64,000 nt of DNA from Dimorphilus gyrociliatus. Taxonomy: Eukaryota > Animalia > Annelida. A model generated the notes under the pieces. It had not been told where the DNA came from. It did not search any database and saw only the letters and a program-made list of their open reading frames with translations. The stretch covers positions 1-64,000 of the forward strand of contig CAJFCJ010000022.1 of assembly GCA_904063045.1 (NCBI GenBank). The letters are read 5' to 3'. Each line of letters begins with the position of its first letter. The first letter of the stretch is position 1. Positions 30,909 to 62,212 of this stretch are shown here, in pieces. Made by a program: the position numbers and the translations under genes.

Positions 30909-31256
30909 TCTTTTCTAGTTGACAGTATATGCTGTTTCATTTATAAATAAAAGCTGAATTAAAGTGTTAATCTTCTTCGTTGAACTGTTCTAATTCCTAA
31001 TTGATTTTGATAAGCTAATTACTATATCCATTTACTAAGCCTACATTGTCATAAATTATGTAGTAACACTATTTTTGTGATGAAAAGTTTGCATTATTAA
31101 AAATGCATAAATATACCTTTTTTATTTATTTAGGCATTATATAGTTTGCTAATGTCTAACAGAATCAGACGCTTATGCTTCACTTCAGTGTTAAATGGGG
31201 ATTTAAGTTTAAAGTCTCCTGTAATTAGATGATTCTCTGTATGACCTCGTTTAAAA

Positions 31257-33666
31257 ATGAAGATATTGAATAAAGGAAATATTGTTTTTATATTAATATC
31301 CTATTCTACGACCGTTCAAGCGATTATGAAATTATTGAATTATTCTATAATTTGGAATTCATTTCAATCTGTTTTATACTACACCGAAGACGAAGGTAGG
31401 TTATATTTTACAATAGTCTAATTAAATGCTTATCCAGTTGCTTTTGTTCAGTATTTCCAGATTCTCTTTACAATAGTAGCATTAATAACAATAATCATAT
31501 TGAGCGTATAGTTACCTCTGATAAAGAATTCTTATCAGAGATGTTCAATCGCAAACGCCAATTAGATTGTATTGCCATTTATTATAGTAAAAATACGTTG
31601 GAACTACTATTTTCTCAGGTAAAAGTAACAAATTGGTTTCTCTTTGTTAGTTTCCACTTTAATTAAAAATTTAAATATCTAATTGGGTTAAACTAGATTG
31701 CGGATAAGATTCATGAAAGTTATATTAATATCAATTTTCATTGGATTATTTTTACTAATCTACACTTAGACTATATTCAAAATATAAAGGCTTTTCAACA
31801 AATAATTAATATAGCCCTTATCAATACGGTAATTTATATGAAATTTATAGATATTTATGGTAATATCTATGTTATCAACAGACGGAATATTCTGGATATA
31901 CTCATTGTTTTCACAATGGACCATATAAAAGACATTGGCAAAAGATAGGCGTTACTAAAGATCATTTCCTGACAAAGCATCACCTATTTCCGTTTTCAAA
32001 GTATGGTTTTAATGGGAAAAAAATGAGAGTTGGATCAAATTACGTAAGAACTTATACTATAAGCAGATATGTTAATATACAAAAAACATATTCTCTCTTT
32101 TAGTGGACATCCTATTTAGACCTTAATCCATCGAACGGAAAATACTCTGGATTAATAATTGATTTAACTAATTACATAGCTGGAGATCTTAATTTCACGT
32201 TTGAAAATTTGTTTTCTATTTGTTTATCGGCGAAATAGTCATTCTATTTTTTTAATACATCTTTCTTGTTACCTAACTGTTTAGGTATGAAATTGTTCTT
32301 CCAAAAGACATGTCGTGGGGTACGCTAAAGAATGGAACTTGGAATGGTCTTGTAAAACAGATATTAGATAAGGTTCATTTTTTACATCTCTCGCATTCCA
32401 AATCAAAAACGCTCGAATATCTTCAGGATATTGATTTTATTATTGCACCTTTAGTGAATTCTCGGAGTAGATCAACCGTTATTGACTTTACAATAAATTT
32501 CAAATACGAAAGAAGAGTTCTTTACTTTGTAAATCATTTACGACATCAAAACTCTTCTAGAAAATCATTATTCATTAAACCATTAAGCTCAACTGTTTGG
32601 TTGTATTTAGGCAAGTTTAACGTTTATATCAATAATCACTGTAATAAAAATGATATTACATTGATCAACTATCCTAAAAAATAGGATTAACTACCGCGTT
32701 GGTTAGTTTCATCATTAGTATAATTGATGTTATGGATAAGAAACGTTTTAGTCCATCCAAAAATATCTTATTTGTTTTCGGATCTGTCTTCAATCAAGGT
32801 GGTTGTCTAACATCAGATCATAGAATATCAAAAAGGATCGTTATATCTATTTGGTGGCTATTTGCTATAACTCTAGTTGCTACGTATTGCGGTAACATAA
32901 TCGCTTATTTGGCGATAAACTCAGTGAAATTACCATTTAATTCTGCTGAAGATCTCATTGATAATAATGATTATAAATTCCTTCTTTTGCCTGGTTCATC
33001 CGACTACGATTTATTTCGAGTATCTTTTTCATTTCTTTTAACTTTTCTATATCTGTATATATAGTATTTACATATTCAAACGCTATTAGAACAGCACAAA
33101 GAGGCCCTATAAACCACTCTGGACAAAATTTCAGAATCTTATTTCTAAAGAGCCTGATCTATTAACAACGGACTTTAACTATATCTTTAACAAAGTTTTA
33201 CAAGGAGGTTACGCTTTAATTACAACAAGATTGTACAGTTTGGAAGAAAAGTATCCTCACCTAAGTCGAACATCGTCTAATTTAGAATTAAATTTCTACG
33301 CATGCGCAGCTGGAAAAGAAAGTTCCTATACTTCGTCTCTTTCGCAATCGTTAGTTTTTCTCTATTTATTGAACAGAATTGTTTGTTCACCTTATGAATT
33401 TCTGGTTTAATTATAGAATATCAAGAACTGTCGAATTTGGTATTATAAAGAAATGGGAAAATAAATGGTTTGAAACTCAAAAAAGACAACTTTCAAGTGA
33501 CAAATCAAACTTTCACGCAGTTGTCAAAAGTATACTTTTATCGGATGTCATTGGAGTGTACATTATGTTGGCAATTGGTCTATCAGGTGCTTTTATTTCG
33601 TTGCTTTTAGAAAAGTACATCAAAGCTATGGAGTCGAGGGAGAAATTGCTTATGAAGTCGAAATGA
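31257..33666 (+). CDS. Divergent ionotropic receptor #2 (tandem paralogue)
   Basis: Same exon layout as IR #1: WNGLVKQI, IAPL..RSTVIDFT, IKPLSSTVW, FGSVFNQGG, WWLFAITLVATYCGNIIAYL, PFNSAEDL, EFGIIKKW, M4. Confidence 0.88.
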
Positions 33667-33947: not shown

Positions 33948-36900
33948 TTAAACATTAACTTTATCATCCTCGCAATCGCTGATCAGTATATGGCAGTTTT
34001 TGCCTGTAAATCCAGCATCGCAAGTACAGAGGTATCCGTCTTTAAGTTGAGTACAAACTCCATTATTCAGACAGGGATTAGGAATACAGCTCTTTACTTC
34101 AGTTTCACAGTCTTTTCCGGTGAAACCTGCCTCGCAGGTACATTCGTATCCAGTTGGCTTGTTAATGCAAGTTGCTCCATTCAAACAAGGACACGATTCA
34201 CAGTAATCGATGATTTCATCACAGTTCTTGCCAGTATAGCCGTCGTCACAAATACATTGGTAGTTGTTAACTTCATTTATACATGTTGCACCGTTCATGC
34301 ACGGATCCGATTTACAGTTGTTAATAATGATGCAGCAATCTTTACCAGTATATCCAGGTTTGCATTGACATGCGAAATCATCAATCAAATTTTCACAAGT
34401 ACCGCCATGTAAACAAGGTTGTGATTCGCAGTTGTCAATAATTTGAGAACAATCCTTTCCTGTATATCCAGCTTTGCAAATACAATGATAGTCGTTAACC
34501 AAGTTCATACAGGTTCCATCATTTAGGCAGGGAGCAACATCACAGTTATCAATAATATCACAACAATCTTTTCCGGTGTATCCAGGTAGGCATGTGCATG
34601 TAAAGTCGTTTAATTTGTTACTACAAGTTCCTCCATGTTTGCATGGATTAGGTTGACAATTGTCAGTCATTTCTTCGCAATTTTTACCTTCGTAGCCGGC
34701 TGGACAATTGCATTCGTAAGCATTTTCGAGGTCATAACAAGTTCCTCCGTTTATGCAGGGATTCGAAGCGCATTCGTCAATGTCTAGTAAAGTATAAACA
34801 TTAATACAAATAATTATATATACAATTATCTTGCTTACCTTCACCGCAGTTTGTTCCTGTCCATCCTGGTTTACATCTACAGATGTAACCATCTACTCTG
34901 TCTTCACAGGTACCGCCGTTCTTACACGGGTTAGAAGCGCATTCGTCAATTTCCTGGTCACAATTCTTTCCAGTCCATCCAGAGTTACAACAGCATTCAT
35001 AATCATTAAGTAGATCTTTGCATGTTGCTCCGTTTCTGCATGGGTTCTCTGCACAATCGTCAATGTTATCGCCGCAATCCTTTCCAGTCCATCCAGCAAC
35101 ACAGGTACATTTGAAGTCATGAACAAGATCAGTACAAGTTCCTCCATTCAAACATGGTTTTGATAGACAATCGTCAATATTTTCATCGCAGTTTTTGTTC
35201 GTCCACCCTGGTGCGCATATGCACTGGTAGTCGTCTACTAAGTCTTTACAAGTTGCTCCATTCTTACAGGGTTTCGCTTTACAGTCATTAATATTATCGC
35301 CGCAATCTTTTCCGTTCCATCCAGGTGTACAGTCGCATTTGAAGTCGTCAATTAGGTCTGTACAACTACCACCGTTTAAGCATGGGTTTGATGCGCATTC
35401 GTTTATGTTAGTTTCGCAATTTCTTCCAGTATATCCAGGTTTGCAGAAACATTGGTAATCATCAACAAGATCCTTACAAGTGCCTCCGTTTACACACGGT
35501 TTGCCCTTGCAGTTATTGATATTTTCGCAGCAATCTTTACCAGTCCATCCAGGTAAGCAGGTACATTTGAAGTCGTGAACAAGATCAGTGCAAGTTCCAC
35601 CATTCAAACATGGCTTAGATTCACAATCGTCAATGTTTGTTTCGCAGTTGCGACCGGTATAGCCAGGTACACAGATACATTGATAGTCATTTACAAGATC
35701 TTTGCATGTTGCTCCATTCTTGCATGGATTTTCTAAACAGTTGTCAATATTAGTATGACAGTTCTTTCCAGTCCATCCTGGTTTACAGTCGCATTTGTAG
35801 TCGTCAAGAAGGTCTGTGCAAGTACCGCCATTCTCACAGGGATTTGAAGCACATTCATTGATATTAATTTGACAGTTAGGTCCAGTATAACCTGGCTCAC
35901 AGCAACATTCATAGCCGTTGAGAAGATCTTTGCAAGTGCCTCCATTATGACATGGATTTGATGCACAATCATCGATATTTTCTTTGCAATTCTTTCCAGT
36001 CCATCCGGAGGGGCATGTGCATCTGTAACCGTTAACAAGATCTCTGCAGGTTCCTCCATTTTCACATGGTCCGGATGCGCAATCGTCGATGTTATTTTCG
36101 CAATTTTTACCAGTCCATCCAGGTTCAACAACGCAGAAACATCTGTAATTGTTAACAAGATCCATACAAATACCACTGTGTTGACAAGGATTGGATTTAC
36201 AATCATCAATGTTTTCTCCACAATCTTTATCCGTCCATCCAGGTTTGCAGTTGCAGTTGTAGTCATCAATAAGATCAGTGCAAGCTCCGCCGTTCTTACA
36301 TGGATTAGAAGCACATTCATTGATGTTAGTCTCACAGTTCTTGCCAGTATATCCTGATTGACAACAGCACTCGTATCCCATGTGAAGATCTTTGCAGGTA
36401 CCTCCATTTTTGCAGGGGCCAGATGCACAATCATCAATATTATCTCCGCAGTCCTTACCAGTCCATCCCTGGGGACAAGTACACTTAAAGTCGCGATGGA
36501 GATCTTCGCATATGCCTCCATTCAAACAAGGCAAAGATGCACAGTCATCGATATTTTCTTCGCAATTTTCTCCAGTCCATCCTGGTCTACAAACACACTG
36601 ATAGTCATTCACTTTGTCGAGGCAAGTACCACCATTTCGGCACGGATTTTCAACACAATCATCAACGTTGTCACAACAGTCCTTGCCAGTCCATCCAGGA
36701 GTGCAAACACATCTGAAGTCATCGATTAAATCAGTACAACTGCCTCCATTCAAACAGGGGTTGGGTTGGCATTCGTTTATATTTGTTTCACAGTTAGTGC
36801 CAGTGAATCCAGGTTTACAGAAGCACTGATAACCGTTGACAAGATCTTTGCATGTTCCACCATTAATACATGGTAAACCTTTACAATCATTGATGTTCTC

Positions 36901-39900
36901 CTCACAGTTCTTTCCAGTGTATCCAACTTTGCAGTTACAATCATAATCATTGATTTTATCAGTACAAGTACCACCGTGCTTACAAGGATTTGAGATGCAT
37001 TCGTTGATGTTTTCATTACACAAGCGACCTGTCCAACCATGTTCACAAACACATTCATAGTTGTTTATATGGTCGACACAAGCAGCAGCATTAATGCAAG
37101 GCTTAGACGCACATTCGTCGATATCGTCACAGCAATCCTTTCCAGTCCAGCCAGGAGCACATGTGCATCTGAAATCATTAACTAGATCATGGCAAATTCC
37201 ATTGTGTTGACATGGGTTTGGTTTGCAATCATCAATGTTTTCATCGCAATGTTCACCAGTCCAGCCAGCGGCACAAATACATTGGTAATCATTCACAAGA
37301 TCTCTACATGTAGCTCCATTCTTGCACGGATTTGGTTTACACTCGTTTACATTCTCTTCACAAATTCTGCCCATCCAACCATGTTGACAAACACATTCAA
37401 ATCTGTTGACCTTGTCTACACAGGTTCCACCATTCTTACACGGGGATGAATCGCACTCATTGATATTATTTCCGCATGTCTTTCCAGTCCATCCAGGAGC
37501 GCAATTACAATCGAAATCATTGACTAAGTCATAGCAACTACCACCATTTTGACAAGGGTTTTCCATACAATCATCGACATTATCGCAACAGTCTTTTCCA
37601 GTCCATCCCGACGTACAGACACACTTGAAATCGTTCACAAGATCAGTACAACTACCACCATTCAAACATGGGTTTGGTTTACAGTCATCGATATTTATAT
37701 CACATATTGTTCCAGTATAACCTGGTACGCAAATACATTGATAGTTGTTCACCAAATCTTTGCAGGTAGCTCCATTTTTACACGGGTTTTCTATGCAATC
37801 ATCTATATTTATTTCACACATTTTTCCAGTGTATCCAGGGGGACACAAACAACTATAACCATTGATCTCATCAAAGCAAGTTCCGCCATGTCTGCAAGGC
37901 GTGGACAAACATTCGTTAATGTTGATTTCGCAATTCTTTCCAGTCCATCCTGGTTTACATACACATTGATAATCATTTACTTTGTCAAGACAAAGTGCAG
38001 CGTTATGACACGGATTTTCAGCACAATCATCGATGTTATCACAACAATCTTTTCCAGTCCAACCAGGTGTACAAGCACACTGGAAGTCATCAACAAGATC
38101 AGTACAGGTTCCACCGTTCAAACATGGTTTTGGTATACAGTCATCAATATTTTCGTCGCAATGACGACCAGTGTATCCAGACGAACAGATACATTGATAA
38201 TCATTCACCAAGTCTTTACATGTAGCTCCGTTCTTGCAAGGAGACTCAACGCAATCGTCAATATTGATTTCACAATTCTTTCCAGTATATCCAGGATTGC
38301 AAGTACATTTGTAATCGTTAATGAGATCTTGGCAAGTACCACCATGTCTGCACGGATTCGAAGAACATTCAATGATGTTTACACCACAGTTCTTTCCGGT
38401 CCAACCCGGTGGACAACCGCATTCATAACCATTTGGAAGATCGTAGCAAGTACCACCGTTTTTACATGGGTTTTCTAGACATTCGTTGACATCTTCACAG
38501 CAGTCTTTTCCAGTCCATCCAGGATTACAAATACATCTAAAGTCATTAACCTTATCTTGGCAAGTACCACCGTTTAAGCAGGGATTGGATGCGCAATCGT
38601 CAATGTTTTCACCGCAATCTTGGCCAGTCCAACCAGCAGCACAAATACACTGGTAGTCGTTTACAAGATCTTTACATGTAGCTCCGTTCTTACATGGGTT
38701 TTCTGCGCATTCGTTAACATTATCTTCACAGATTCTGCCAGCCCAGCCATGTGGACAAGTACATTCAAAACCATTCACTTTATCAAAACAAGTTCCACCG
38801 TGTTTGCAAGGATTAGATGCGCATTCGTCAATATTGATATCACAATTCTTTCCTATCCAACCAGCTTTACAAACGCATTTATAATCATTTACTTTATCTA
38901 GACATTCTGCTTCATTCTTGCATGGATTTTCAGCACAATCGTCGATATTTTCACAACAATCTTTTCCAGTCCAACCAGCTGTGCAGGTACAACTGAAGTC
39001 ATCAACCAAGTCTTGGCAAGTTCCACCGTTTTGACATGGGTTGGGTTTGCAGTCATCGATATCGATTTCGCATTTTGTACCTGTGTATCCCGATGCACAG
39101 ATACATTTATAATCGTCAATAAGATCTTTACAAGTAGCCCCATTTTTACAAGGGTTTTCAGCACATTCATCAATATTGATTTCGCAACTCTTGCCTGTAT
39201 AACCTGGAGCGCAATTGCACGAGTAATCGTTACTTCCATCGACGCAGGTACCGCTATGACGACATGGTTGAGATGCACATTCGTTAATATTTGTTTCACA
39301 GTCTTTTCCAGTCCATCCAGGAACGCAAGTACAACTATAATCATTAACCAAATCGAAGCATGTACCACCATTTTTACATGGATTTTCAACACAATCGTCA
39401 ACATTTTCACAACAATCTTTGCCAGTCCAGCCAGGTCGACAAATACATCTAAAGTCATCAATAAGATCTTGACAAGTACCGCCATTCAAACATGGGTTTG
39501 GTTTACAATCATTTATATCAATGTCACATATTTCACCAGTGTATCCGGATGCGCAAATACATTTATATCCATTCACAAGATCTTTGCATGTAGCTCCGTT
39601 CTTGCAAGGATTTTCTGCACAATCGTCAATATTGATTTCACAATTCTTTCCAGTATATCCAGGATTACAAGTACATTTGTAATCGTTAATGAGATCTTGG
39701 CAAGTACCACCATGTCTGCACGGATTCGAAGAACATTCGTTGATTTCTTGGCCGCAGTTCTTTCCAGTCCAACCAGGCATACAACCACAATAGTATCCAT
39801 TCTCTTGATCGTAGCAAGTACCACCGTTTTTACATGGGTTTTCTAGACATTCGTTGATATCTTCACAACAGTCTTTGCCAGTCCATCCAGCTGTACAAGC

Positions 39901-42900
39901 ACATTCAAAGTCATTGACAAGGTCTTTGCAAGTACCACCATTAAGGCAAGGTTGAGGGAAGCAATCGTCAATGTTTTCACCGCAATCTTGTCCAGTCCAA
40001 CCAGCGGCACAAATACATTGGTAGTCGTTTACAAGATCTCTGCATGTAGCTCCGTTTTTACATGGGTTTTCTGCGCATTCGTTAACATTTTCTTCACAGA
40101 TTCTACCAGCCCAGCCTTTGGGACACGTACAATCGTAACCGTTTACTCTGTCGATACAGGTTCCGCCGTGTTTACATGGGATGGAAGCACATTCGTCAAT
40201 ATTGATATCACAATTCTTTCCAGTCCATCCTGGTTTGCAGATGCATTGGTAATCGTTTACCTTATCAAGACATTCACCTTGATTTCTGCATGGATTTTCA
40301 GCACAGTCATCGATGTTATCACAACAATCTTTTCCAGTCCAACCAGGCAAACATTGACAACTGAAGTCATCAACGAGATCTGTACATGTTCCGCCATTCA
40401 AACATGGGTTGGGTTTGCAGTCATCGATATCGATTTCACAATTTCGGCCAGTGTAACCAGAATCGCAAATACATTGATAATCATTTACCAAATCTTTGCA
40501 AGTAGCTCCATTCTTACAAGGGTTTTCTTTGCAATCATTGATATTCCAGCCACATCTTTTTCCTGAAAATCCTGGTGGGCATGTGCAAGAATAATCATTT
40601 AGTTTGTCGGTACAACTACCGCCATTAAGGCATGGCTTCGATGCACATTCATCAATATCAATTTCGCAGTTTCGGCCTGTATAACCAGGTATACATGTGC
40701 AGACGTAGTCATTTATCAAATCGTAGCAGGTGGCGCCATTTATGCACGGGTTTTCAGCGCAATCGTTTATGTTATCACAACAATCTTTTCCTGTCCATCC
40801 AGCTACACAAGAACATTGGAAATCATTAACCAGATCGGTACAGGTTCCACCATTCAAACAAGGACTGGATTCACATTCATTGATGTCAGTTTGGCAATTT
40901 GTTCCAGTATAACCAGGAGCACAAATGCATTGGTAACCATTTACTAAATCTTTGCAAGTAGCACCATTTTTGCATGGATTTTCGGCGCAGTCGTCTATAT
41001 TTTTTTCGCAAAGTGGTCCAGTATAGCCAGGTTGACATGTACAGACAAAGCCATTTATTTGATCCCGACAAGTTCCGCCATTTCTGCACGGATCTGAAAC
41101 ACATTCATCAATTGGAACATCACAATTTTCTCCCATCCAACCAGGAGCACAATCACAATAATATCCATTGACCTTATCATAACATGTTCCTCCATTCTTG
41201 CAAGGATTTTCAATACATTCATCGATGTCGTCACAACAGTCCTTACCAGTCCATCCTGGTGGACAATTACATAGGAAGTCGTTTACAAGGTCTTTGCATG
41301 TACCACCATTTAAGCATGGATTCGGTGCACAATCATCAATGTTTTCACCACAATCTTCACCAGTCCAACCGGCAGCACAAATACATTGGTAGTCGTTTAC
41401 AAGATCTTTACACGTAGCTCCATTCTTACACGGGTTTTCTGCGCATTCGTTAACATTATCTTCACAGATTCTACCAGCCCAGCCATGTACACAGGTACAC
41501 TCATAACCATTGACCTTATCAAGACAAGTTCCACCATGTTTACAAGGATTAGACGCACATTCATCGATATCGATATCGCAATTCTTTCCAGTCCAACCAG
41601 CTTTACAAACGCATTGGTAATCATTAATTTTGTCGAGGCATACAGCACCGTTCTTGCATGGGTTTTCAGCACAGTCATCAATGTTGTCGCAGCAATCTTT
41701 TCCAGTCCAGCCAGGTCGACAAATACATCTGAAATCATCAACTAAATCTTGACAAGTTCCACCATTATCACAGGGATTAGGTGAACAATCATCAACATCA
41801 ATGTCACAAATTCTTCCCACATATCCAGCTGCACAAATACACTGGAAATCATTTACAAGATCTTTACATGTTGCGCCATTCTTGCAAGGATTTTCAATGC
41901 AATCGTCAATATCAATTTCACAGCTCTTTCCAGTGAACCCTTCACGACAGTCGCATAAATAGTCATTTACTCTGTCTCTGCAAGTACCGCCATTTCGACA
42001 AGGGGAAGAGGCACATTCGTTAATGTTGGTTTCACAATCCTTTCCAGTCCATCCTGGAACACAGGTGCAAGCATAGTTGTTGATCAAATCGTAACAAGTT
42101 GCACCGTTTTTACATGGACCATTAGCGCAGTCATCGATGTTATCACAGCAATCTTTACCGGTCCAACCAGGGGTACATGCACACTGGAAGTCATCAACAA
42201 GATCAGTACAGGTTCCACCATTCAAACATGGGTTTGGTTTACAGTCATCAATATTTTCGTCGCAATGACGACCAGTGTATCCAGACGAACAGATACATTG
42301 ATAATCATTCACCAAGTCTTTACATGTAGCTCCGTTCTTGCAAGGAGACTCAACGCAATCGTCAATATTGATTTCACAATTCTTTCCAGTATATCCAGGA
42401 TTGCAAGTACATTTGTAATCGTTAATGAGATCTTGGCAAGTACCACCATGTCTGCACGGATTCGAAGAACATTCAATGATGTTTACACCACAGTTCTTTC
42501 CGGTCCAACCCGGTGGACAACCGCATTCATAACCATTTAGAAGATCGTAGCAAGTACCACCGTTTTTACATGGGTTTTCTAGACATTCGTTGACATCTTC
42601 ACAACAATCTTTGCCAGTCCATCCAGGATTACATATACATCTAAAGTCATTAACCTTATCTTGGCAAGTACCACCGTTTAAGCAGGGATTGGATGCGCAA
42701 TCGTCAATGTTTTCACCGCAATCTTGGCCAGTCCAACCAGCAGCACAAATACATTGATAATCGTTTACAAGATCTCTGCATGTAGCCCCATTCTTACATG
42801 GGTTTCCTGCGCATTCGTTAACATTATCTTCGCAAATTCTACCAGCCCAGCCTTTGGGACAAGTACAATCGTAACCGTTTACTCTGTCGATACAGGTTCC

Positions 42901-45900
42901 GCCGTGTTTGCATGGGTTGGAAGCACATTCATCAATATTGATATCACAGTTCTTTCCAGTCCATCCTGCTTCGCAGACACATTGGTAATCGTTTACCTTA
43001 TCAAGACATTCACCTTGATTTCTGCATGGATTTTCAGCACAGTCATCGATGTTATCACAACAATCTTTTCCAGTCCAACCAGGCAAACATTGACAACTGA
43101 AGTCATCAACGAGATCTGTACATGTTCCGCCATTCAAACATGGGTTGGGTTTGCAGTCATCGATATCGATTTCACAATTTCGACCTGTGTAACCAGAATC
43201 GCAAATACATTGATAATCGTTTACCAAATCTTTGCAAGTTCCTCCATTTTTACAAGGGTTTTCAGCGCACTCATCAATATTGATTTCGCAACTCTTGCCT
43301 GTATAACCTGGAGCGCAATTGCACGAGTAATCGTTTTCGCCATCTGTGCAAGTACCGCTATGACGGCATGGTTGAGATGAACATTCATTAATGTTTGTTT
43401 CACAGTCTTTTCCAGTCCATCCGGGAAGACATTTACAAGTATAATCATTAACCAAATCGAAGCATGTACCACCATTTTTACATGGATTTTCAACACAATC
43501 GTCAACATTGTCACAACAATCTTTGCCAGTCCAGCCAGGTCGACAAATACATCTAAAGTCATCAATAAGATCTTGACAAGTTCCACCATTCAAACATGGG
43601 TTTGGTTTACAATCATCAATATTTTCGTCGCAATGACGACCAGTGTATCCAGAGGAACAGATACATTGATAATCATTAACCAAGTCTTTACATGTTCCTC
43701 CGTTGTTACAAGGATTTTCAGCACATTCGTCAATATTGATTTCACAATTCTTTCCAGTATATCCAGGATTACAAGTACATTTGTAATCGTTTATAAGATC
43801 TTGGCAAGTACCACCATGTCTGCACGGATTCGAGGAACATTCGTTGATTTCTTGACCGCAGTTCTTTCCAGTCCAACCAGGCATACAACCACAATAGTAT
43901 CCATTCTCTTGATCGTAGCAAGTACCACCGTTTTTACATGGGTTTTCTAGACATTCGTTGATATCGTCACAACAGTCTTTGCCAGTCCATCCAGCTGTAC
44001 AGGCACACTCAAAGTCATCGACAAGGTCTTTGCAAGTACCACCATTAAGGCAAGGTTGAGAGAAGCAATCGTCAATGTTTTCACCGCAATCTTCACCAGT
44101 CCAACCAGCAGCACAAATACATTGGTAGTCGTTTATAAGGTCTTTGCATGTAGCTCCGTTCTTACATGGGTTTTCTGCGCATTCGTTAACATTATCTTCA
44201 CAGATTCTACCAGCCCAGCCTTTATGACATGTACAATCGTAACCATTTACTCTGTCAATACAAGTTCCGCCGTGTTTGCATGGGTTGGAAGCACATTCGT
44301 CAATATTGATATCACAATTCTTTCCAGTCCATCCTGGTTTGCAGACGCATTCGTAATCGTTAACCAAGTCTAAACATTTGCCTTGATTCTTACATGGATT
44401 TTCAGCACAGTCATCGATGTTATCACAACAATCTTTTCCAGTCCAACCAGGCAAACATTGACAACTGAAGTCATCAACGAGATCTGTACATGTTCCGCCA
44501 TTCAAACATGGGTTGGGTTTGCAGTCATCGATATCGATTTCACAATTGCGACCGGTGTAGCCGTAATCGCAAATACATTGATAATCATTTACCAAATCTT
44601 TGCAAGTTCCTCCATTTTTACAAGGGTTTTCAGCACATTCATCAATATTGATTTCGCAACTCTTGCCTGTATAACCTGGAGCGCAATTGCACGAGTAATC
44701 GTTTTCGCCATCTGTGCAGGTACCGCTATGACGGCATGGTTGAGATGAACATTCATTAATGTTTGTTTCACAGTCTTTTCCAGTCCATCCGGGAAGACAT
44801 TTACAAGTATAGTCATTAACCAAATCGAAACATGTACCACCATTTTTACATGGATTTTCAACACAATCGTCAACATTATCACAACAATCTTTGCCAGTCC
44901 AGCCAGGTCGACAAATACATCTAAAGTCATCAATAAGATCTTGACAAGTTCCACCATTCAAACATGGGTTTGGCTTGCAGTCATCTATGTCAGTTTGACA
45001 ATTTCGACCAGTATACCCGGATGGACAAATACATTGATAATCATTAACCAAGTCTTTACAGGTTCCTCCGTTCTTACAAGGATTTTCAGCACAGTCGTCA
45101 ATATTAAATTCACAATTCTTTCCAGTATATCCAGGATTACAAGTACATTTGTAATCGTTTATGAGATCTTGGCAAGTACCACCATGTCTGCACGGATTCG
45201 AGGAACATTCGTTGATTTCTTGACCGCAGTTCTTTCCAGTCCAACCAGGCATACAACCACAATAGTATCCATTCTCTTGATCGTAGCAAGTACCACCGTT
45301 TTTACATGGGTTTTCTAGACATTCGTTGATATCGTCACAACAGTCTTTGCCAGTCCATCCAGCTGTACAAGCACACTCAAAGTCATCGACAAGGTCTTTG
45401 CAAGTACCACCATTAAGGCAAGGTTGAGAGAAGCAATCGTCAATGTTTTCACCGCAATCTTCACCAGTCCAACCGGCAGCACAAATACATTGGTAGTCGT
45501 TTACAAGATCTTTGCAAGTAGCTCCGTTTTTACAAGGGTTTTCTGCGCATTCGTTAACATTATCTTCACAGATTCTACCAGCCCAACCTTTGGGACACGT
45601 ACAATCGTAACCGTTTACTCTATCAATACAGGTTCCGCCGTGTTTGCATGGGTTGGAAGCACATTCATCAATATTGATATCACAGTTCTTTCCAGTCCAT
45701 CCTGGTTTGCAGATGCATTGGTAATCGTTTACCTTATCAAGACATTCACCTTGATTTCTGCATGGATTTTCAGCACAGTCATCGATGTTATCACAACAAT
45801 CTTTTCCAGTCCAACCAGGCAAACATTGACAACTGAAGTCATCAACGAGATCTGTACAAGTTCCGCCATTCAAACATGGGTTGGGTTTGCAGTCATCGAT

Positions 45901-48900
45901 ATCGATTTCACAATTTCGACCTGTGTAGCCGTAATCGCAAATACATTGATAATCATTTACCAAATCTTTGCAAGTTCCTCCATTTTTACAAGGGTTTTCA
46001 GCGCACTCATCAATATTGATTTCGCAACTCTTGCCTGTATAACCAGGAGCGCAAATGCACGAGTAATCGTTTACGCCATCTGTGCAGGTACCGCTATGAC
46101 GGCATGGTTGAGATGAACATTCATTAATGTTTGTTTCACAGTCTTTTCCAGTCCATCCGGGAAGACATTTACAAGTATAGTCATTAACCAAATCGAAGCA
46201 TGTACCACCATTTTTACATGGATTTTCAACACAATCGTTAACATTATCACAACAATCTTTGCCAGTCCAGCCAGGTCGACAAATACATCTAAAGTCATCA
46301 ATAAGATCTTGACAAGTTCCACCATTCAAACACGGGTTTGGTTTACAATCATCAATATTTTCGTCGCAATGACGACCAGTGTATCCAGACAAACAGATAC
46401 ATTGATAATCATTCACCAAGTCTTTGCATGTTCCTCCATTGTTGCATGGATTTTCAGCACATTCATCAATATTGATTTCACAATTCTTTCCAGTATATCC
46501 AGGATTACAAGTACATTTGTAATCGTTTATGAGATCTTGGCAAGTACCACCATGTCTGCACGGATTCGAGGAACATTCGTTGATTTCTTGACCGCAGTTC
46601 TTTCCAGTCCAACCAGGCATACAACCACAATAGTATCCATTCTCTTGATCGTAGCAAGTACCACCGTTTTTACATGGGTTTTCTAGACATTCGTTGATAT
46701 CGTCACAACAGTCTTTGCCAGTCCATCCAGCTGTACAGGCACACTCAAAGTCATCGACAAGGTCTTTGCAAGTACCACCATTAAGGCAAGGTTGAGAGAA
46801 GCAGTCGTCAATGTTTTCACCACAATCTTCACCAGTCCAACCGGCAGCACAAATACATTGGTAGTCGTTTATAAGGTCTTTGCATGTAGCTCCGTTCTTA
46901 CATGGGTTTTCTGCGCATTCGTTAACATTATCTTCACAAATTCTACCAGCCCAGCCATGTACACAGGTACACTCATAGCCATTGACCTTATCAAGACAAG
47001 TTCCACCGTGTTTACAAGGATTTGACGCACATTCATCAACATTGATATCACAGTTCTTTCCAGTCCATCCTGGTTTGCAGACGCATTCGTAATCGTTAAC
47101 CAAGTCTAAACATTTGCCTTGATTCTTACATGGATTTTCAGCACAGTCATCGATGTTATCACAACAATCTTTTCCAGTCCAACCAGGCAAACATTGACAA
47201 CTGAAGTCATCAACGAGATCTGTACATGTTCCGCCATTCAAACATGGGTTGGGTTTGCAGTCATCGATATCGATTTCACAATTGCGACCGGTGTAGCCGT
47301 AATCGCAAATACATTGATAATCATTTACCAAATCTTTGCAAGTTCCTCCATTTTTACAAGGGTTTTCAGCGCACTCATCAATATTGATTTCGCAACTCTT
47401 GCCTGTATAACCTGGAGCGCAATTGCACGAGTAATCGTTTACGCCATCTATGCAGATACCGCTATGACGGCATGGTTGAGATGAACATTCATTAATGTTT
47501 GTTTCACAGTCTTTTCCAGTCCATCCGGGAAGACATTTACAAGTATAATCATTAACCAAATCGAAGCATGTACCACCATTTTTACATGGATTTTCAACAC
47601 AATCGTCAACATTATCACAACAATCTTTGCCAGTCCAGCCAGGTCGACAAATACATCTAAAGTCATCAATAAGATCTTGACAAGTTCCACCATTCAAACA
47701 TGGGTTTGGTTTACAATCATCAATATTTTCATCGCAATGACGACCAGTGTATCCAGAGGAACAGATACATTGATAATCATTCACCAAGTCTTTACATGTT
47801 CCTCCATTGTTGCATGGATTTTCAGCACATTCGTCAATATTGATTTCACAATTCTCACCAGTATATCCAGGATTACAAGTACATTTGTAAGCATTAATGA
47901 GATCTTGGCAAGTACCACCATGTCTGCACGGATTCGAAGAACATTCGTTGATTTCTTGACCACAGTTTTTTCCAGTCCAGCCAGGTGGACAACCGCAATC
48001 ATAACCGTTTGGAAGATCGTAGCAAGTACCACCGTTTTTACATGGGTTTTCTAGACATTCGTTGATATCGTCACAACAGTCTTTGCCAGTCCATCCAGCT
48101 GTACAGGCACACTCAAAGTCATCGACAAGGTCTTTGCAAGTACCACCATTAAGGCAAGGTTGAGAGAAGCAGTCGTCAATGTTTTCACCGCAATCTTCAC
48201 CAGTCCAACCGGCAGCACAAATACATTGGTAGTCGTTTATAAGGTCTTTGCATGTAGCTCCGTTCTTACATGGGTTTTCTGCGCATTCGTTAACATTATC
48301 TTCACAAATTCTACCAGCCCAGCCATGTACACAGGTACACTCATAGCCATTGACCTTATCAAGACAAGTTCCACCGTGTTTACAAGGATTTGACGCACAT
48401 TCATCAACATTGATATCACAGTTCTTTCCAGTCCATCCTGGTTTGCAGACGCATTCGTAATCGTTAACCAAGTCTAAACATTTGCCTTGATTCTTACATG
48501 GATTTTCAGCACAGTCATCGATGTTATCACAACAATCTTTTCCAGTCCAACCAGGCAAACATTGACAACTGAAGTCATCAACGAGATCTGTACAAGTTCC
48601 GCCATTCAAACATGGGTTGGGTTTGCAGTCATCGATATCGATTTCACAATTGCGACCGGTGTAGCCGTAATCGCAAATACATTGATAATCGTTTACCAAA
48701 TCTTTGCAAGTAGCTCCATTTTTACAAGGGTTTTCAGCACATTCATCAATATTGATTTCACACATTTTACCGGTGTAGCCAGGGGCGCAGTTACAATCAT
48801 AATCAGCTATTTTATCGGAACAGGTGCCAGCGTGTCGACAAGGGTTAGGAGAACAGTCGTTTATGTTTATTTCACAGTTTGTTCCTGTATATCCCATGGG

Positions 48901-51830
48901 GCAATCGCAAGCGTAGCTATTTGGTAAATCATAGCACACGCCTCCATTTTTGCAAGGATTTGCCTGACATTCATCAATGTCAATGCAACAGTCCTTTCCG
49001 GTCCATCCAGGTAAGCAGGTGCATTCAAAATCATTGATACGGTCAGTACACGTTCCACCGTTCAAGCAAGGGCTTGACTGGCAGTCGTCAATATCTATCG
49101 AACATAAAGGTCCAGTCCATCCAGGTGTGCAGATACATTGGAAGGAGTTGATGAGATCTTTGCAAGTGGCTCCATTCTGGCATGGTGCTTCAATGCATTC
49201 GTTGATATTTATTTCACAGCTTTTTCCAGTGTAGCCTTGTTGACATTCACATGTATAGTCATTAACTTGATCTGTGCAAGTACCACCATGTCGGCATGGA
49301 TTTGAAAGGCATTCATTTATGTTTATTTGACAATTTTGTCCAGAATAACCAGGAGCACATTCACAAGCGTAGCCGTTTTCTTTGTCATGACAAGTTGCTC
49401 CATTCAGGCATGGGTTTTTATCGCATTCATTAATGTTGTCACAACAATCTTTTCCAGCCCAACCAGCTGTACAGAAACAACTGAAGTCATCAACAAGATC
49501 ATTACAACTTCCACCATTTAAACATGGGTTTGGTTTGCAATCATCAATGTTTTCACCGCAATCCGACCCAGTCCAGCCAGCGGCACAAATGCACTGATAA
49601 GCGTTTACGAGATCTTTACATGTAGCTCCGTTTTTACATGGGTTTTCTGCGCATTCGTTAACATTATCTTCACAGATTCTTCCAGCCCAACCTTGAGGAC
49701 AGGTGCATTCAAAACCATTTATTCTGTCGTGGCACGAACCACCATTTTTACAAGGTGAAGATTGACACTCGTCGATGTTTTCCATACAATTTCGTCCAGT
49801 GTAGCCTGGTTTGCAAGCGCACTTGTAATCGTTGACCAAATCATAACAGGTTCCGCCATTTCCGCATGGGTTTTCAGCACACTCGTTGATATTTTCGCAA
49901 CAATCTTTACCTCTCCATCCATCTAAACAGAAACACTGGAAATCATTCACACGGCCTTCACAAGTGCCACCATTCAAGCATGGATTGGGTTCACACATGT
50001 TGATTACTTCTCCGCAGTCAATACCTGTATATCCAGCGGCGCATTCGCAGATATATCCATTTATTTTATCATGGCAAGTGGCGCCGTTTTTGCAAGGCTG
50101 TGATAAACATTCGTCGATTTCTTTTTCGCAACGAACTCCAGTGTATCCTGGCTCACACGAGCATGTGAAAGAATTTGGACTGCTGGTACAGGTACCATGA
50201 AAACATGGATCAGGTTTACAGTTATTGATCAGAGTTTCACAATTCGTTCCAGTATATCCTTCAGGGCATTCGCAGTCGTATCTATTCTTTCCATTCTTAC
50301 AAGTTCCACCATTTTGACAAGGATTAGATTCACATTCATTAATGTCGACGTCACAGTTTTTACCAGTATATCCTGGCTTGCAAATACATTGGTAGGTTGT
50401 TGGTGTAGACACGCAGCCGAGGGAGTGTACACAAGGGTCAGGGTTACAATGGTCAATTGGTGTTTCACAATGAAGTCCAGTGAAACCGGCAGGACACACA
50501 CATTCATAACCAATTCTTAAATCTTTACATGTACCACCATTGAAGCAAGGATTCGGATCGCAACGATTGACTTCAGTTTCACAGTTGATACCAGTGAAAT
50601 CGATAGGACATATACATTTGTACGAAGAAAGACGATTCTCACATGTTCCGCCGTTGGTACAAGGATTCGATTTACAAGGATTTTTTTCAGTTTCACAATG
50701 TACCCCAGTATATTCCGATGGACAGACGCATTTATATCCATTGACTTCAGGGATGCATGTAGCTCCATTTTGACATGGGTTCGAATTACAATAGTTGATC
50801 ATTGTTTCACAATTTTTACCCGTGAATCCAACGGGGCATTGACATTCATAATCATTTGTAAATTCTATGCATGTTGCACCATTCTTGCATGGATCCGGTG
50901 AGCATGTACGTTTATCTGAAACACAAACATATATTACACCATTGATTTAAAAAAGAATCTATACACATACTTGTTGCCTTGCAAGTGTCCTCCAAGATTA
51001 TGTTCTTGAATTTTTCAATGTCGTTAAAGTTAGCAATTCTTATAATTTTCGATAAGTCGGATGCGATGGCTTGGATTTCGTTTTCATTTACGGAGCCAAC
51101 AGGAATAGCGAATACAGTAACATTAAGAGATGTATGGACTTTTAATTGTTCGGCTGTAGGTATGGTTAAATGCGGATTTTCATTTGAGGCACCATCAGTG
51201 AGAACTAGAGCGATATTCGGGACATCTAATCTGTCACCTCCGCTGGGTGTGAAAACTTCATCCATTGCCTTTTGCAATCCACCTGCAGTGTTTGTTCGAC
51301 CAGAATCATAACCTATATTTTCAATGGCAGTCAAAATTGATTGACGGTCGGAAAGGTCATCCAAGTCGAAAATAAGTGTACAATCTGTAGCAAAAGTGAT
51401 TGCCGCTACTCTCGTATGAACGAGTGAAATGTCGAACGCTGCAGTAACATCACGAATGAATTTCTTCTGTATGGCAAAATTTGCTTGACCAATAGATCCA
51501 CTGGCATCGATGATCCAGCATATATCGACTGGGCTGCACACTGAAAAACGATGCAAACATAGTATAAAAATGACTGTAAATAGATATTCACTTACCTATT
51601 TCACACTTTTTTCCAACGTAGCCGAGTTTACATTCGCATTCAAAGTCATTTTCGTGATTAATACATTTTACTTTTCCTTCATCAAGACATGGATTAGATG
51701 CACAGTGATCAGTAGCCAGGGACACGAGTCGTTCATCACAATTTTCACCTGCACATTTCAGTTTTCTTTCGTGCACAGGTGAAGTGGTGATTTGTCCCAC
51801 AAGAAGACAAACCAAAATTACCCTATACAT
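33948..51830 (-). CDS. Giant secreted SP-EGF-vWA-(EGF)~148 protein, ~5,905 aa (gene A)
   Basis: Exons 51830-51596, 51540-50971 (vWA with intact MIDAS DASGS/T/TDG), 50915-34839 (16,077 nt) and 34783-33948 sum to 17,718 nt in one frame. Mostly Ca-binding-type EGFs; no TM, LNR, ANK, CUB or avidin domain. Confidence 0.9.
34839..50915 (-). repeat. Hierarchical coding tandem repeat (114/456/1368 nt)
   Basis: EGF unit 114 nt; KDCC motif every 4 EGFs; shadow ORFs recur at 43573/44941/46309/47677 and 44056/45424/46792/48160, exactly 1368 nt apart. Confidence 0.92.
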
Positions 51831-52021: not shown

Positions 52022-52234
52022 GACTTTTACCTTCGGAGATGCTGCCTCCTAATGACGAATCTACTGAAAATGCCCAATTTATACACCTTGGCCAGACGCC
52101 ACGTATAGCGTTTAAACTACTCTACTGTCTGAAACTCATTTTTTTCTATATAGCTTTCTTAAGGAAATGCGACGTGGAACATGAGTTTTTTAGCCAACTT
52201 TAAAAAAAAGACAAAAAAACTTTTGGTGACGTAG
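52022..52234 (-). promoter_or_regulatory. TATA promoter and 5'UTR exon of gene A
   Basis: TATAAA on the minus strand at 52078-52083; short UTR exon ending at a GTAAGT donor (52021); acceptor just before ATG 51830; ACGT-core motifs at 52098, 52170 and 52227. Confidence 0.55.
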
Positions 52235-53470
52235 CTCTAAGATTTGCTCAAAAATTATCGGATGATTGAAATATAGGCCTCAGTGTTCACAAAAAAAATC
52301 AATTTTTTAACTTTTTTTTTAAAGAAAATATGAAAAATTAAAGAAAATATGGTAATCTTTTAAAGAAAAGTCAGTCTTAAAAGTATTAAGATTCTAGACT
52401 AGTCGTAAATTATCATTTCAAAATAGTATAGACATTTTTAATTTTTCGCGAATGGAATAATATCTTATCTTATCTTTTTGAGAATAGGGAATTTATTATT
52501 TATTGTACATGCATTATGATAGTTATGGATGTTTAAGTTGATTAACAATGATATATCAGATAATTGAATTAGTTTAAAGTCTCTTCCAGAAGTAATATAA
52601 GATTGTTATAGATTAATTAAGTGAACTTTCATTCCCTCTGTCAGTTTTTTTCCCATCTATTCACGAATAACTTATTAAGTGAAGAGTATATTAACTCCCA
52701 TTCCAAGATATCTTCAAAGTGAATGTTAATAAACTACACTAAATTTGTATATATGTACGTGTAAATGATCTTATAATCAGTTATTAAGGTTTTTGGAGGA
52801 AGAAGAACTTGTGGAAAGTTTAACAGACAAGATAAATTCACTAAATAGAGTATAATATATAAATGATAATAACAAAACAATAATCATGATTTATTAAAAC
52901 TTTATTAAAATCATATAGAAAAATCATTATTCGTAGTATATAGATGTTTTTTATTGAAATTGTTATATAAAACGTTACAGTTTTTTGGGTAATTACGTGT
53001 CAGCGTTCATTTTTTACGGACAGACAGATTTTTTTTAAAGCTACATGTCGAGCAATGTCATGTTGTTTTTGTCCCCAAAAAGAGAAGAGAGCATTTGCCA
53101 CGTTGAAACTTCAAAAAAAACTGTTTTTGAGCAATGAAAACACAGGTGTATAACGAAATTTTCTTGTCCGCCCCCATACGAGGACAGTCGGAGACAAGAG
53201 TTCATAGCGTCAATTGCTGTAAGTTATTTTAAGTATAATTTTTCATTATTCTACTGATAAAACTATAAAATAAAACTTAATATTTCATTGATACGGTTGA
53301 TAATAATGTATTTTTTTCATATTTTTATATAAACAAATAGGACAAGCAGTATTCACCAAAGTTTTGCGGAAACAAAAGTCTCACTTTGGGAAGGTAAACA
53401 TCTATTTAAATAAAATTTGTATATGAATAAATTTTAAAATGCGTTTTTCATCCATAGAGTAAACTCTTTG

Positions 53471-62149: not shown

Positions 62150-62212
62150 TCTAAAAAGACAAAATATTGTCAATAATAAATAAAAAATGCGAAGAAGTTG
62201 TTAAAATTCATA

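What the first reader, a model, noticed from the sequence alone, without database searches (positions are those of the whole stretch)
34839..50915. 16,077-nt uninterrupted exon encoding ~141 EGF domains in a tiny-intron genome
Seen: one stop-free reading frame spans 16 kb, bounded by phase-1 splice sites, giving a ~5,900-aa secreted protein with ~149 EGFs (Notch has 36, fibrillin about 47). Inference: it forms a Ca-stiffened rod hundreds of nm long with an N-terminal vWA head.
Basis: seen in the sequence. Interest (0 to 1): 0.75.

Follow-up and report, generated by a model that had tools for sequence, protein, structure and literature searches.

The report
Giant 150-EGF secreted rod protein gene
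A tiny marine worm's compact genome really does carry a gene whose single 16-kb exon encodes 141 of the 150 calcium-binding EGF modules of a secreted 5,905-residue protein, probably a long cross-linkable extracellular rod. It is unusually large and regular, but it is not a new kind of protein.

Summary
Observation confirmed. On the minus strand, 50915-34839 is one 16,077-nt exon with no stop codons. It has GT..AG phase-1 introns of 55 nt on both sides and encodes 141 tandem EGF modules, 138 of them exactly 38 aa.

The four-exon model gives a 5,905-aa, 637-kDa, acidic (pI 4.2) protein:
- a signal peptide;
- one EGF;
- one VWA domain with an intact metal-binding motif;
- 149 contiguous Notch-type calcium-binding EGFs;
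- no membrane anchor.

The array is not an assembly stutter. Its ten 12-EGF super-repeats are 66-97% identical, and the closest pair differs at 38 sites. pN/pS is 0.15, and the genome holds no second copy.

The rod-with-VWA-head reading is well supported by sequence rules and a confident fold, but it is untested.

Two features are distinctive. The run of EGFs is unbroken, and one spare cysteine is invariant in every fourth EGF.

Expression, tissue and function remain unknown. The best guess is a disulfide-laddered matrix or secreted fibre.

The scan noted this same stretch three times and noted nothing like it on other DNA.

The parts
52077..52083 (-). TATAAAT, a possible TATA box about 250 nt upstream of the ATG. 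Two short GT..AG intervals lie between it and the ATG and may be 5'UTR introns.
   Evidence: Read directly. Inference only; no transcript data.
51596..51830 (-). Exon 1 (235 nt): ATG at 51830, signal-peptide-like N-terminus, EGF number 1. Ends in phase 1 before gtaagt.
   Evidence: Pfam EGF E 5.6e-07.
51541..51595 (-). Intron 1: 55 nt, GT..AG, phase 1.
50971..51540 (-). Exon 2 (570 nt): VWA domain with a DASGS...T...D metal-binding motif.
   Evidence: Pfam PF00092 E 3.3e-35. Nearest solved chains are collagen VI alpha3 VWA and mussel thread matrix protein PTMP1.
50916..50970 (-). Intron 2: 55 nt, GT..AG, phase 1.
34839..50915 (-). Exon 3 (16,077 nt): 141 tandem EGF modules, no stop codon. Periodicities of 114, 456 and 1,368 nt.
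43174..48645 (-). The most homogenised core: four 1,368-nt (12-EGF) super-repeat copies, 92-97% identical to each other. This is the only part where copy number could plausibly be mis-assembled.
   Evidence: identity matrix; the closest pair differs at 38 nt. (longest exact repeat 404 nt).
34784..34838 (-). Intron 3: 55 nt, GT..AG, phase 1.
33948..34783 (-). Exon 4 (836 nt): 8 further EGFs. The protein ends 9 residues after the last cysteine, and the stop TAA is at 33950-33948. No anchor and no other domain.

Best explanation
This is a real, intact, protein-coding gene of an annelid, very probably Dimorphilus gyrociliatus. It encodes a secreted, very acidic 637-kDa protein made of a signal peptide, one EGF, one collagen-VI/matrilin-type VWA domain and 149 contiguous Notch-type calcium-binding EGF modules.

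Shown here:
- the gene structure;
- the domain content;
- purifying selection on the repeats;
- the Notch-like fold of the modules.

Inferred:
- With Ca2+ bound, most EGF-EGF junctions are stiff, so the protein would be a thin rod a few hundred nm long, with possible hinges about every 12 modules.
- The VWA head docks the rod by metal-dependent binding, to collagen or to another matrix partner.
- One unpaired cysteine is invariant in every fourth module (152-aa spacing, 30 in a row). It cannot find a partner within a stiff rod, so it would disulfide-bond in register to neighbouring molecules and build a covalently laddered fibre or sheet.
- The fibre or sheet would sit in an extracellular matrix or in a secreted material such as cuticle or apical matrix, mucus, adhesive or egg capsule.

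The array grew by unequal crossing-over of intron-less 4- and 12-module units, which explains why 16 kb of coding sequence sits in one exon.
For: Gene integrity:
- No stops in 5,358 codons, against 59-686 stops in the other frames.
- Three canonical 55-nt phase-1 introns.
- 138 of 141 units are exactly 38 aa with all six cysteines.

Selection:
- pN/pS is 0.147 (pS 0.19) among super-repeat copies and 0.335 among diverged units.

Assembly:
- No N in the window.
- The longest exact repeat is 404 nt.
- The ten super-repeats are 66-97% identical and all distinguishable.
- There is no second copy in the 77.9-Mb assembly.
- The assembly's size and contig number match a published PacBio long-read assembly (PMC7854359).

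Domains:
- Pfam finds EGF, hEGF, EGF_CA and VWA.
- The nearest solved sequences are Notch1 EGF fragments and DLL1, and for the VWA domain collagen VI and PTMP1.

Rod:
- 122 of 149 interfaces meet the Ca-consensus plus packing-aromatic rules.
- The AF2 model of four EGFs has pLDDT 92.6.
- It matches Notch1 EGF20-24 (TM 0.71) and EGF11-13 (rmsd 2.6-3.2 A).

Spare cysteine:
- It is invariant in 30 of 30 four-EGF blocks.

Secretion:
- There is no hydrophobic run, and the protein ends 9 aa after the last EGF.

Family context:
- The same EGF | phase-1 intron | VWA-EGFn cassette recurs next door.
- A VWA exon 61% identical, with the same exon limits, exists in another organism's assembly. It is closer to this gene than to any in-genome paralogue.

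Precedent for tandem-EGF proteins as secreted fibres:
- Scallop byssal proteins have up to 49 EGFs (PMC9168380).
- Dumpy in fly apical matrix (PMC8520396).
Against: - I could reach no transcript, CAGE, proteomic or in situ evidence. Three word searches returned no protein from this locus, spliced or not, so expression and the splice pattern are inferred from sequence alone.
- Copy number within the 5.5-kb, 92-97% identical core rests on one PacBio CLR assembly that I could not check against reads.
- Rigidity, Ca binding, the free-thiol state and the VWA ligand are predictions.
- About 27 interfaces depart from the rod consensus.
- The tissue and the material it belongs to are unknown. The basic Lys/Tyr-rich neighbour hints at a glue-like or secretory role rather than a classical matrix role.
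Confidence: 0.6

Rival explanations
1. It is a component of a secreted glue, mucus or egg capsule rather than of a tissue matrix. The acidic, Ca-binding giant (pI 4.2) would be co-secreted with the basic, Lys/Tyr-rich VWA-EGF protein encoded 4 kb upstream. The two would condense by charge and Ca2+ and then cure through cysteine, and possibly tyrosine, cross-links, as in mussel, scallop or sandcastle-worm holdfasts.
For: - The neighbouring VWA-EGF gene has pI 8.6-9.2, 12-16% Lys and 4.6-6.2% Tyr.
- The second-best solved match of the VWA domain is mussel thread matrix protein PTMP1.
- EGF-array proteins are main byssus components in scallop.
- There are no N-glycan sequons in any of the 149 rod EGFs, where about 55 would be expected.
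- Periodic free cysteines suit curing.
Against: - No expression data link the two genes to a gland.
- The giant itself is not Tyr- or Lys-rich (3.1% and 5.4%).
- The PTMP1 match is generic VWA similarity, and collagen VI scores far higher.
- This rival overlaps with the best explanation: both describe a cross-linked extracellular fibre.
Confidence: 0.25
2. The size is inflated by mis-assembly of near-identical repeats, and the true gene has far fewer modules.
For: - Four super-repeat copies (5.5 kb) are 92-97% identical.
- The assembly was made from error-prone PacBio CLR reads with PBcR.
- A mis-join in register would leave the frame and the 4- and 12-module registers intact.
Against: - Every copy carries private differences, at least 38 per 1,368 nt. 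These are mostly synonymous (pS 0.19 against pN 0.03), which is the signature of real divergence rather than consensus error.
- The longest exact repeat is 404 nt.
- There is no frameshift in 16 kb.
- There is no alternative copy elsewhere in the assembly.
- Even if the four similar copies collapsed to one, 114 EGFs would remain.
Confidence: 0.07
3. It is a soluble modulator or decoy of Notch-type signalling, or another EGF-binding pathway, rather than a structural protein.
For: - The modules are 40-45% identical to Notch1 and DLL1 EGFs.
- They carry the O-fucose (125), O-glucose (54) and EOGT (122) acceptor motifs typical of Notch.
- The genome has members of the corresponding enzyme families.
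Against: - There are no DSL, MNNL/C2, LNR, NOD or ANK domains and no transmembrane segment.
- 150 nearly uniform modules under concerted evolution fit a material, not a specific binding surface.
- The same glycosylation motifs occur in Dumpy (for EOGT: PMC8520396) and in fibrillin (per PMC8405936, title and abstract as listed).
Confidence: 0.05
4. It is a silent or decaying repeat array that merely happens to remain open.
For: No expression evidence was obtainable here.
Against: - 5,358 codons without a stop or frameshift.
- pN/pS 0.15.
- All cysteines are kept in 138 of 141 units.
- The start codon, splice sites and VWA motif are intact.
Confidence: 0.03

Closest known systems
Drosophila Dumpy (apical extracellular matrix giant)
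   Same: A huge extracellular protein built mainly of EGF modules. Very large exons encode many modules (my own knowledge, not checked here). Its EGFs carry EOGT-type acceptor motifs. It is a tension-bearing fibre (PMC8520396).
   Different: - Dumpy has more than 300 EGFs interleaved with 185 DPY modules and PIGSFEAST repeats, and it is membrane-anchored. It also has a ZP domain (my own knowledge).
- This protein has none of these. Pfam finds only EGF-type families and VWA, and there is no hydrophobic segment.
- This protein has a VWA head instead.
Fibrillins / LTBPs
   Same: Long arrays of Ca-binding EGFs whose Ca-dependent interfaces give rod-like segments. They are secreted and form disulfide-linked microfibrils. 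The EGFs are O-glucosylated (per PMC8405936; PMC4826273).
   Different: - Fibrillin-1 has 47 EGFs, interrupted by TB and hybrid domains (PMC2724076 abstract). No TB or hybrid domain is found here.
- The modules here are the Notch type by sequence and fold.
- The spare cysteines here are periodic, one per four EGFs.
Notch receptor EGF region (and DLL1)
   Same: The nearest solved sequences and structures: 40-45% identity, the same six-residue C6-to-C1 spacing, the same Ca consensus, and the same O-fucose, O-glucose and O-GlcNAc motifs.
   Different: It has no LNR, NOD, ankyrin, DSL or membrane parts. It has four times as many modules. The modules are uniform and evolve in concert.
Matrilins / AMACO (VWA2) / collagen VI VWA domains
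   Same: Secreted proteins that combine a collagen-VI-type VWA domain with EGF modules. The VWA domain here scores best against collagen VI alpha3.
   Different: Matrilins have 1-10 EGFs and a C-terminal coiled coil (my own knowledge). Here there are 150 EGFs, and the chain stops 9 residues after the last EGF, so no coiled coil can fit.
Uncharacterised giant EGF proteins in databases: Strongylocentrotus purpuratus LOC579853 (6,666 aa), Seison nebaliae SNEBB_005763 and SNEBB_000637, and an ENA metagenome or other assembly protein (5,645 aa)
   Same: Comparable length, with about 92-132 EGF motifs. The sea-urchin protein also has a near-identical 38-aa EGF array.
   Different: - Only 30-38% identical, so no orthology is evident.
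- All carry other parts that are lacking here: FA58C and SRCR domains in the sea-urchin protein, a large non-EGF C-terminal region in both Seison proteins (a membrane anchor is evident in one), and a membrane anchor in the ENA protein.
- None has the VWA head.
- Their longest uninterrupted EGF runs are 37-115, against 149 here.
Scallop byssal EGF proteins (Sbp9 and 'EC proteins') and mussel foot protein 2
   Same: Lophotrochozoan secreted materials built from tandem EGF modules, cross-linked after secretion (PMC9168380).
   Different: - The scallop proteins have up to 49 EGFs with Calx-beta inserts.
- Mfp-2 is basic and rich in Tyr/DOPA (my own knowledge).
- This protein is acidic and poor in Tyr. 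Its basic neighbour resembles Mfp-2 more.

Membership tests
Calcium-binding EGF module (Pfam EGF / hEGF / EGF_CA; Notch type) | Six cysteines in the C1..C6 pattern with C4-x-C5. | tested here: met
   150 C4-x-C5..C6 motifs, of which 145 match a strict six-Cys regular expression. Pfam EGF gives 70 + 69 + 7 + 1 stretches.
Calcium-binding EGF module (Pfam EGF / hEGF / EGF_CA; Notch type) | Ca-binding consensus D/N-x-D/N-E/Q before C1, plus D/N..Y/F between C3 and C4. | tested here: met
   - 123 of 149 modules have D/N-x-D/N-(E/Q/D)-C1. 59 of these have strict E/Q. Asp at that position still binds Ca in Notch1 EGF7 and EGF9 (PMC4826273).
- 141 of 149 have the D/N..Y/F element.
- Ca binding itself was not measured.
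Calcium-binding EGF module (Pfam EGF / hEGF / EGF_CA; Notch type) | EGF fold, with elongated tandem packing. | tested here: met
   The AF2 model has pLDDT 92.6. Foldseek gives E 5e-19 and TM 0.71 to Notch1 EGF20-24, and rmsd 2.6-3.2 A to EGF11-13. This is a prediction, not an experiment.
Fibrillin / LTBP | TB (8-Cys) and hybrid domains interspersed among the cbEGFs. | tested here: not met
   Pfam scans of all four exons list only EGF-type families and VWA.
Notch receptor | LNR repeats, heterodimerisation domain, transmembrane segment, ankyrin repeats. | tested here: not met
   None appears in the Pfam output. There is no hydrophobic run of 15 or more residues.
Dumpy | DPY modules between EGFs, a ZP domain, and a membrane anchor. 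| tested here: not met
   149 EGFs follow one another at 38-aa spacing with nothing between them. There is no ZP domain and no anchor.
Matrilin | VWA domain(s) plus EGFs plus a C-terminal coiled-coil oligomerisation domain. | tested here: not met
   VWA and EGF are present, but the chain ends 9 residues after the last EGF, so there is no room for a coiled coil.
VWA domain with MIDAS | DxSxS ... T ... D metal-ion-dependent adhesion site. | tested here: met
   The sequence reads D-A-S-G-S, then T in GRTNT, then D in LTDGAS. Pfam VWA covers positions 1-171 of 174. Metal and ligand binding were not tested.
Fibropellin | EGF array followed by a C-terminal avidin-like domain (feature from my own knowledge). 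| tested here: not met
   There is no non-EGF domain at the C-terminus. 'Fibropellin-like' names among the hits are automatic labels.
Mussel foot protein-2-like adhesive EGF proteins | Basic, Tyr(DOPA)- and Lys-rich EGF repeats (feature from my own knowledge). | tested here: not met
   The giant has pI 4.2, 3.1% Tyr and 5.4% Lys. The neighbouring gene does meet the composition: pI 9.2, 6.2% Tyr, 16% Lys.

The most novel reading that the evidence does not exclude
The giant is one half of a two-component extracellular material that has not been described.

An acidic, Ca-loaded rod about 0.4 um long carries one free thiol every four EGFs, roughly every 10-12 nm. It would zip in register into a disulfide 'ladder' fibre. 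It would be condensed or glued by the basic Lys/Tyr-rich VWA-EGF protein encoded immediately upstream.

This would be a new design principle for cbEGF fibres: periodic covalent rungs instead of terminal multimerisation. It might explain the adhesive, mucus or egg-capsule material of this miniature worm.
Probability: 0.2. Interest if true: 0.7.

Novelty: new variant of a known kind. Interest (0 to 1): 0.45.

Why it matters
- **Scale.** It would be among the longest uninterrupted arrays of calcium-binding EGF modules seen: 149 in a row, against a longest run of 115 among the 120 best-scoring long proteins I retrieved. It sits in one of the most compact animal genomes, where a single exon takes up 16 kb.
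- **Natural test object.** Because the modules are so uniform, the protein could help answer open questions about cbEGF rods. How stiff is a very long Ca-loaded array? What do the Notch-type O-glycans do on a purely structural protein? What does a strictly periodic unpaired cysteine achieve?
- **Annotation.** It is also a caution for annotators. Arrays like this are easily masked as tandem repeats or split by gene predictors.
- **Limits.** It is not a new protein class, and its biology in the worm is still unknown.

Tried and rejected
Word searches:
1. The giant exon, candidates 2,950-9,400 aa. No protein from this locus and no close orthologue; the best hit was 38% identical.
2. The VWA exon, candidates 105-330 aa. 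Only P0228 was found.
3. The last exon, hoping for a spliced transcript fragment across the exon 3/4 junction. Only generic EGF proteins at 50% identity or less. This search produced nothing useful.

Their blanks say nothing about expression, because proteins of this genome seem to be absent from the collection.

Other searches:
4. The large representative search with the VWA exon. The ranking is dominated by multi-VWA proteins; the only informative hit was P0228.
5. The look-up of encoding contigs for P0228, to see whether an EGF array follows its VWA exon.
6. The listing of cluster members for P0228. It returned only 'Logan, 3,091-nt contig', with no organism.
7. A search for a second copy or haplotig of the super-repeat in the same assembly found none.
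8. Literature searches for dinophilid glands, cocoon or cuticle proteins returned nothing usable.

Ideas rejected:
- Fibrillin, Notch, Dumpy, matrilin and fibropellin membership (see the membership tests).
- An internal unspliced intron. The 114-nt register is unbroken, so a 55-nt AT-rich intron has nowhere to hide.
- A real gene on the antisense strand. The open frames of 309-316 aa there come from the repeat's composition.

The joined four-exon protein was built only inside local scripts, to count length, composition and motifs.

Full report
**Observation**

The feature lies on the minus strand. The mechanical ORF list shows a 5,333-codon ORF at 34801-50802. Extended upstream to the previous stop, the open frame is 50946-34801, or 5,381 codons.

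Within the claimed exon the coding frame has no stops. The other five frames have 59-686 stops, and 100 shuffles of the exon never produced an open frame longer than 174 codons.

The sequence around both ends shows ..tgtttcag|ATAAACG at 50915 and ..GGTGAAG|gtaagca after 34839. A script confirmed four exons: 51830-51596, 51540-50971, 50915-34839 and 34783-33948. All introns are 55 nt with GT..AG ends and phase 1. The joined reading frame is 17,718 nt with a single terminal stop.

**Content**

The exon holds 141 C4-x-C5...C6 motifs. 138 units are exactly 38 aa. Pfam finds EGF, hEGF, EGF_CA and related families throughout, and nothing else.

- Exon 1 gives a signal-peptide-like start and one EGF.
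- Exon 2 is a complete VWA domain (E 3e-35).
- Exon 4 adds eight EGFs and stops nine residues after the last cysteine.

The model protein has 5,905 aa, 637 kDa, pI 4.2, 15.9% Cys and 150 EGFs, 149 of them contiguous. It has no hydrophobic run and no RGD or furin-type site.

The joined protein was used only inside local scripts.

**Is the array real?**

DNA self-identity peaks at 114 nt and more strongly at 456 and 1,368 nt. TRF reports a 456-nt period with 25.6 copies.

Units 20-77 and 93-113 have partners at lags of 12, 24 or 36 units, mostly with 90-100% identity. Both ends of the array are only 65-85% like anything else.

The ten in-register 1,368-nt super-repeats are 66-97% identical, and the closest pair still differs at 38 positions. 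Only four copies (48645-43174) are 92-97% alike. The longest exact repeat is 404 nt, and the window has no N.

Differences between copies are mostly synonymous: pS 0.19, pN 0.029, ratio 0.147. That is the signature of real, selected divergence rather than consensus noise.

No second copy of the super-repeat exists in the assembly.

The assembly has 77,897,245 bases in 349 contigs. This matches the published long-read (PacBio, PBcR) assembly of Dimorphilus gyrociliatus: about 78 Mb, about 350 scaffolds (PMC7854359). Earlier notes of this scan name the same species. I take the identification as very probable but indirect.

A mis-count could affect only the 5.5-kb core. Even if its four copies collapsed to one, 114 EGFs would remain.

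**What kind of EGF?**

The unit consensus is [33 protein letters not shown]/Y-T-G-K-N-C. The nearest solved sequences are DLL1 and Notch1 EGF fragments (E 1e-64 to 1e-27).

A four-EGF block was folded using the 30 in-protein blocks as its alignment. It gave pLDDT 92.6. It matches Notch1 EGF20-24 (TM 0.71), EGF8-12 (TM 0.66) and EGF11-13 (rmsd 2.6-3.2 A).

Weisshuhn et al. (PMC4826273) give sequence rules for a rigid junction: the Ca consensus in the C-terminal domain, with Asp tolerated at the third position, plus an aromatic residue four positions after C5 of the preceding domain. By these rules 122 of 149 interfaces qualify. The exceptions lie in the first nine and last nine modules and roughly once per 12-module super-repeat ('GQEINEC').

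A stiff rod with occasional hinges is therefore the best structural reading. At about 2.5-3 nm per module (my own knowledge) it would be roughly 0.4 um long. This is inference.

**Other regularities**

- One extra cysteine directly follows C6 ('GKDC-C') in every fourth module. Thirty occur in a row at exactly 152-aa spacing, and the residue is invariant in 30 of 30 four-module blocks. In a stiff rod these thiols are too far apart to pair with each other, so intermolecular, in-register disulfides are the natural expectation. This is inference.
- Acceptor motifs for O-fucose (125 modules), O-glucose (54), EOGT O-GlcNAc (122) and Asx hydroxylation (139) are present (the motifs are from my own knowledge). 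The genome encodes members of the O-FucT, GT90, GT61 and Asp/Asn-hydroxylase families. This is family level only.
- The 149 rod modules contain no N-x-S/T sequon, although shuffling predicts about 55 for the protein. The only sequon is in the VWA domain.

**Context**

Immediately upstream on the same strand lie two long open frames with the same cassette. The first is 62150-57532: signal peptide, EGF, an intron, then VWA and 33 EGFs. The second is 57477-55619: VWA and 12 EGFs.

The first ends ..CSLG|gtaagt, and the second starts after ..ttttttttag| in phase 1 with no start region of its own. They are therefore probably one gene with two VWA-EGFn cassettes.

That protein is basic (pI 8.6-9.2) and rich in Lys and Tyr, the opposite of the giant.

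A fourth VWA paralogue lies at C22:122.6 kb with few EGFs.

The 5,381-codon frame is by far the largest EGF-bearing open frame in the genome. The next largest are 2,639 and 2,334 codons.

**Relatives**

No close orthologue of the array was found; the best hit is 38% identical.

The whole-library search with the VWA exon found one single-domain hit, P0228. It is 245 aa, from a 3.1-kb Logan contig, and 61% identical. It is an ORF called across one exon with the same start and end as exon 2. It is clearly closer to this gene (61%) than to the in-genome paralogues (42-48%).

An orthologous VWA exon therefore exists in another organism.

**Comparison with what is known**

This understates known maxima.

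- Dumpy has over 300 EGFs in up to 23,000 aa (PMC8520396).
- Among the 120 best long hits, motif counts reach 132 (an ENA protein), 121 and 107 (Seison nebaliae) and 92 (sea urchin LOC579853). Their longest uninterrupted runs are 115, 52, 37 and 57, against 149 here.

The protein fails the defining features of fibrillin, Notch, Dumpy, matrilin and fibropellin (see the membership table). It is best described as a new architectural variant of the multi-EGF matrix proteins: a VWA head, a pure cbEGF rod and periodic spare cysteines.

**Function**

My preferred reading, at about 0.6, is a secreted, Ca-stiffened, disulfide-laddered fibre anchored or nucleated through its VWA domain.

A close rival, at about 0.25, is that it belongs to a secreted glue, mucus or capsule material together with its basic neighbour. 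Scallop byssus offers a lophotrochozoan precedent for EGF-array fibres (PMC9168380).

Assembly inflation (0.07), a Notch-pathway decoy (0.05) and a silent array (0.03) are less likely, for the reasons given under the rivals.

No expression evidence could be obtained with the tools available. That is the main gap.

**Verdict**

The gene is real, striking in size and regularity, and probably unannotated or unremarked. It is a variant of a well-known kind with unknown biology. Interest is 0.45.

Noticed in passing
window 55619-62173, minus strand: The two open frames upstream are joined by a canonical phase-1 GT..AG intron (donor CSLG|gtaagt near 57531, acceptor near 57478), and the second has no start region of its own. 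They are probably one gene: signal peptide-EGF-VWA-EGF33-VWA-EGF12. The product is basic (pI 8.6-9.2) and rich in Lys and Tyr, the charge opposite of the acidic giant next door.
   Followed up: partly
window 33948-50915 (all rod EGFs): There is no N-x-S/T sequon in any of the 149 rod EGFs, although the protein is 10.4% Asn. Shuffles predict about 55 for the whole protein. The only sequon is in the VWA domain. This looks like strong avoidance of N-glycosylation on the rod.
   Followed up: partly
window 36448-50127, minus strand: The four positions of the 4-EGF super-repeat are distinct module types with type-specific invariant residues. For example, 'GWTGKDCC' always closes type b, and 'CRHGGTC' marks type d. 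The 12-EGF unit contains one module per copy whose Ca consensus starts with Glu ('GQEINEC'), which may be a regular hinge.
   Followed up: partly
window 53468-53968, plus strand: A small open frame on the opposite strand, between the two VWA-EGF genes, encodes a signal-peptide-like start followed by 3-4 EGFs (166 aa, pI 4.5). It may be a separate small secreted EGF protein.
   Followed up: no
G000:C22:122593-123165 (L001) and G000:C6:5416468-5419559: These are further VWA paralogues. The C22 copy is 49% identical and has only a few EGFs. The C6 copy is 39% identical and sits next to EGF repeats with 71-76% DNA similarity to the giant's super-repeat. The VWA-EGFn cassette is therefore a small gene family in this genome.
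   Followed up: partly
P0228 (Logan contig of 3,091 nt, organism not given): A single-exon ORF call containing a VWA exon with the same boundaries as exon 2. It is 61% identical to this gene and only 42-48% identical to the in-genome paralogues, so it is probably the orthologue in a related species.
   Followed up: partly
window 37549-38478 plus strand, and other antisense frames of the array: Open frames of 309-316 codons on the antisense strand of the array are a by-product of the repeat's composition. They should not be taken for genes.
   Followed up: yes
window 29888-33666, plus strand: Several exon-sized open frames resemble ionotropic-receptor transmembrane regions. They converge on the 3' end of the giant gene, and the space between the two genes is only a few hundred bases.
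   Followed up: no
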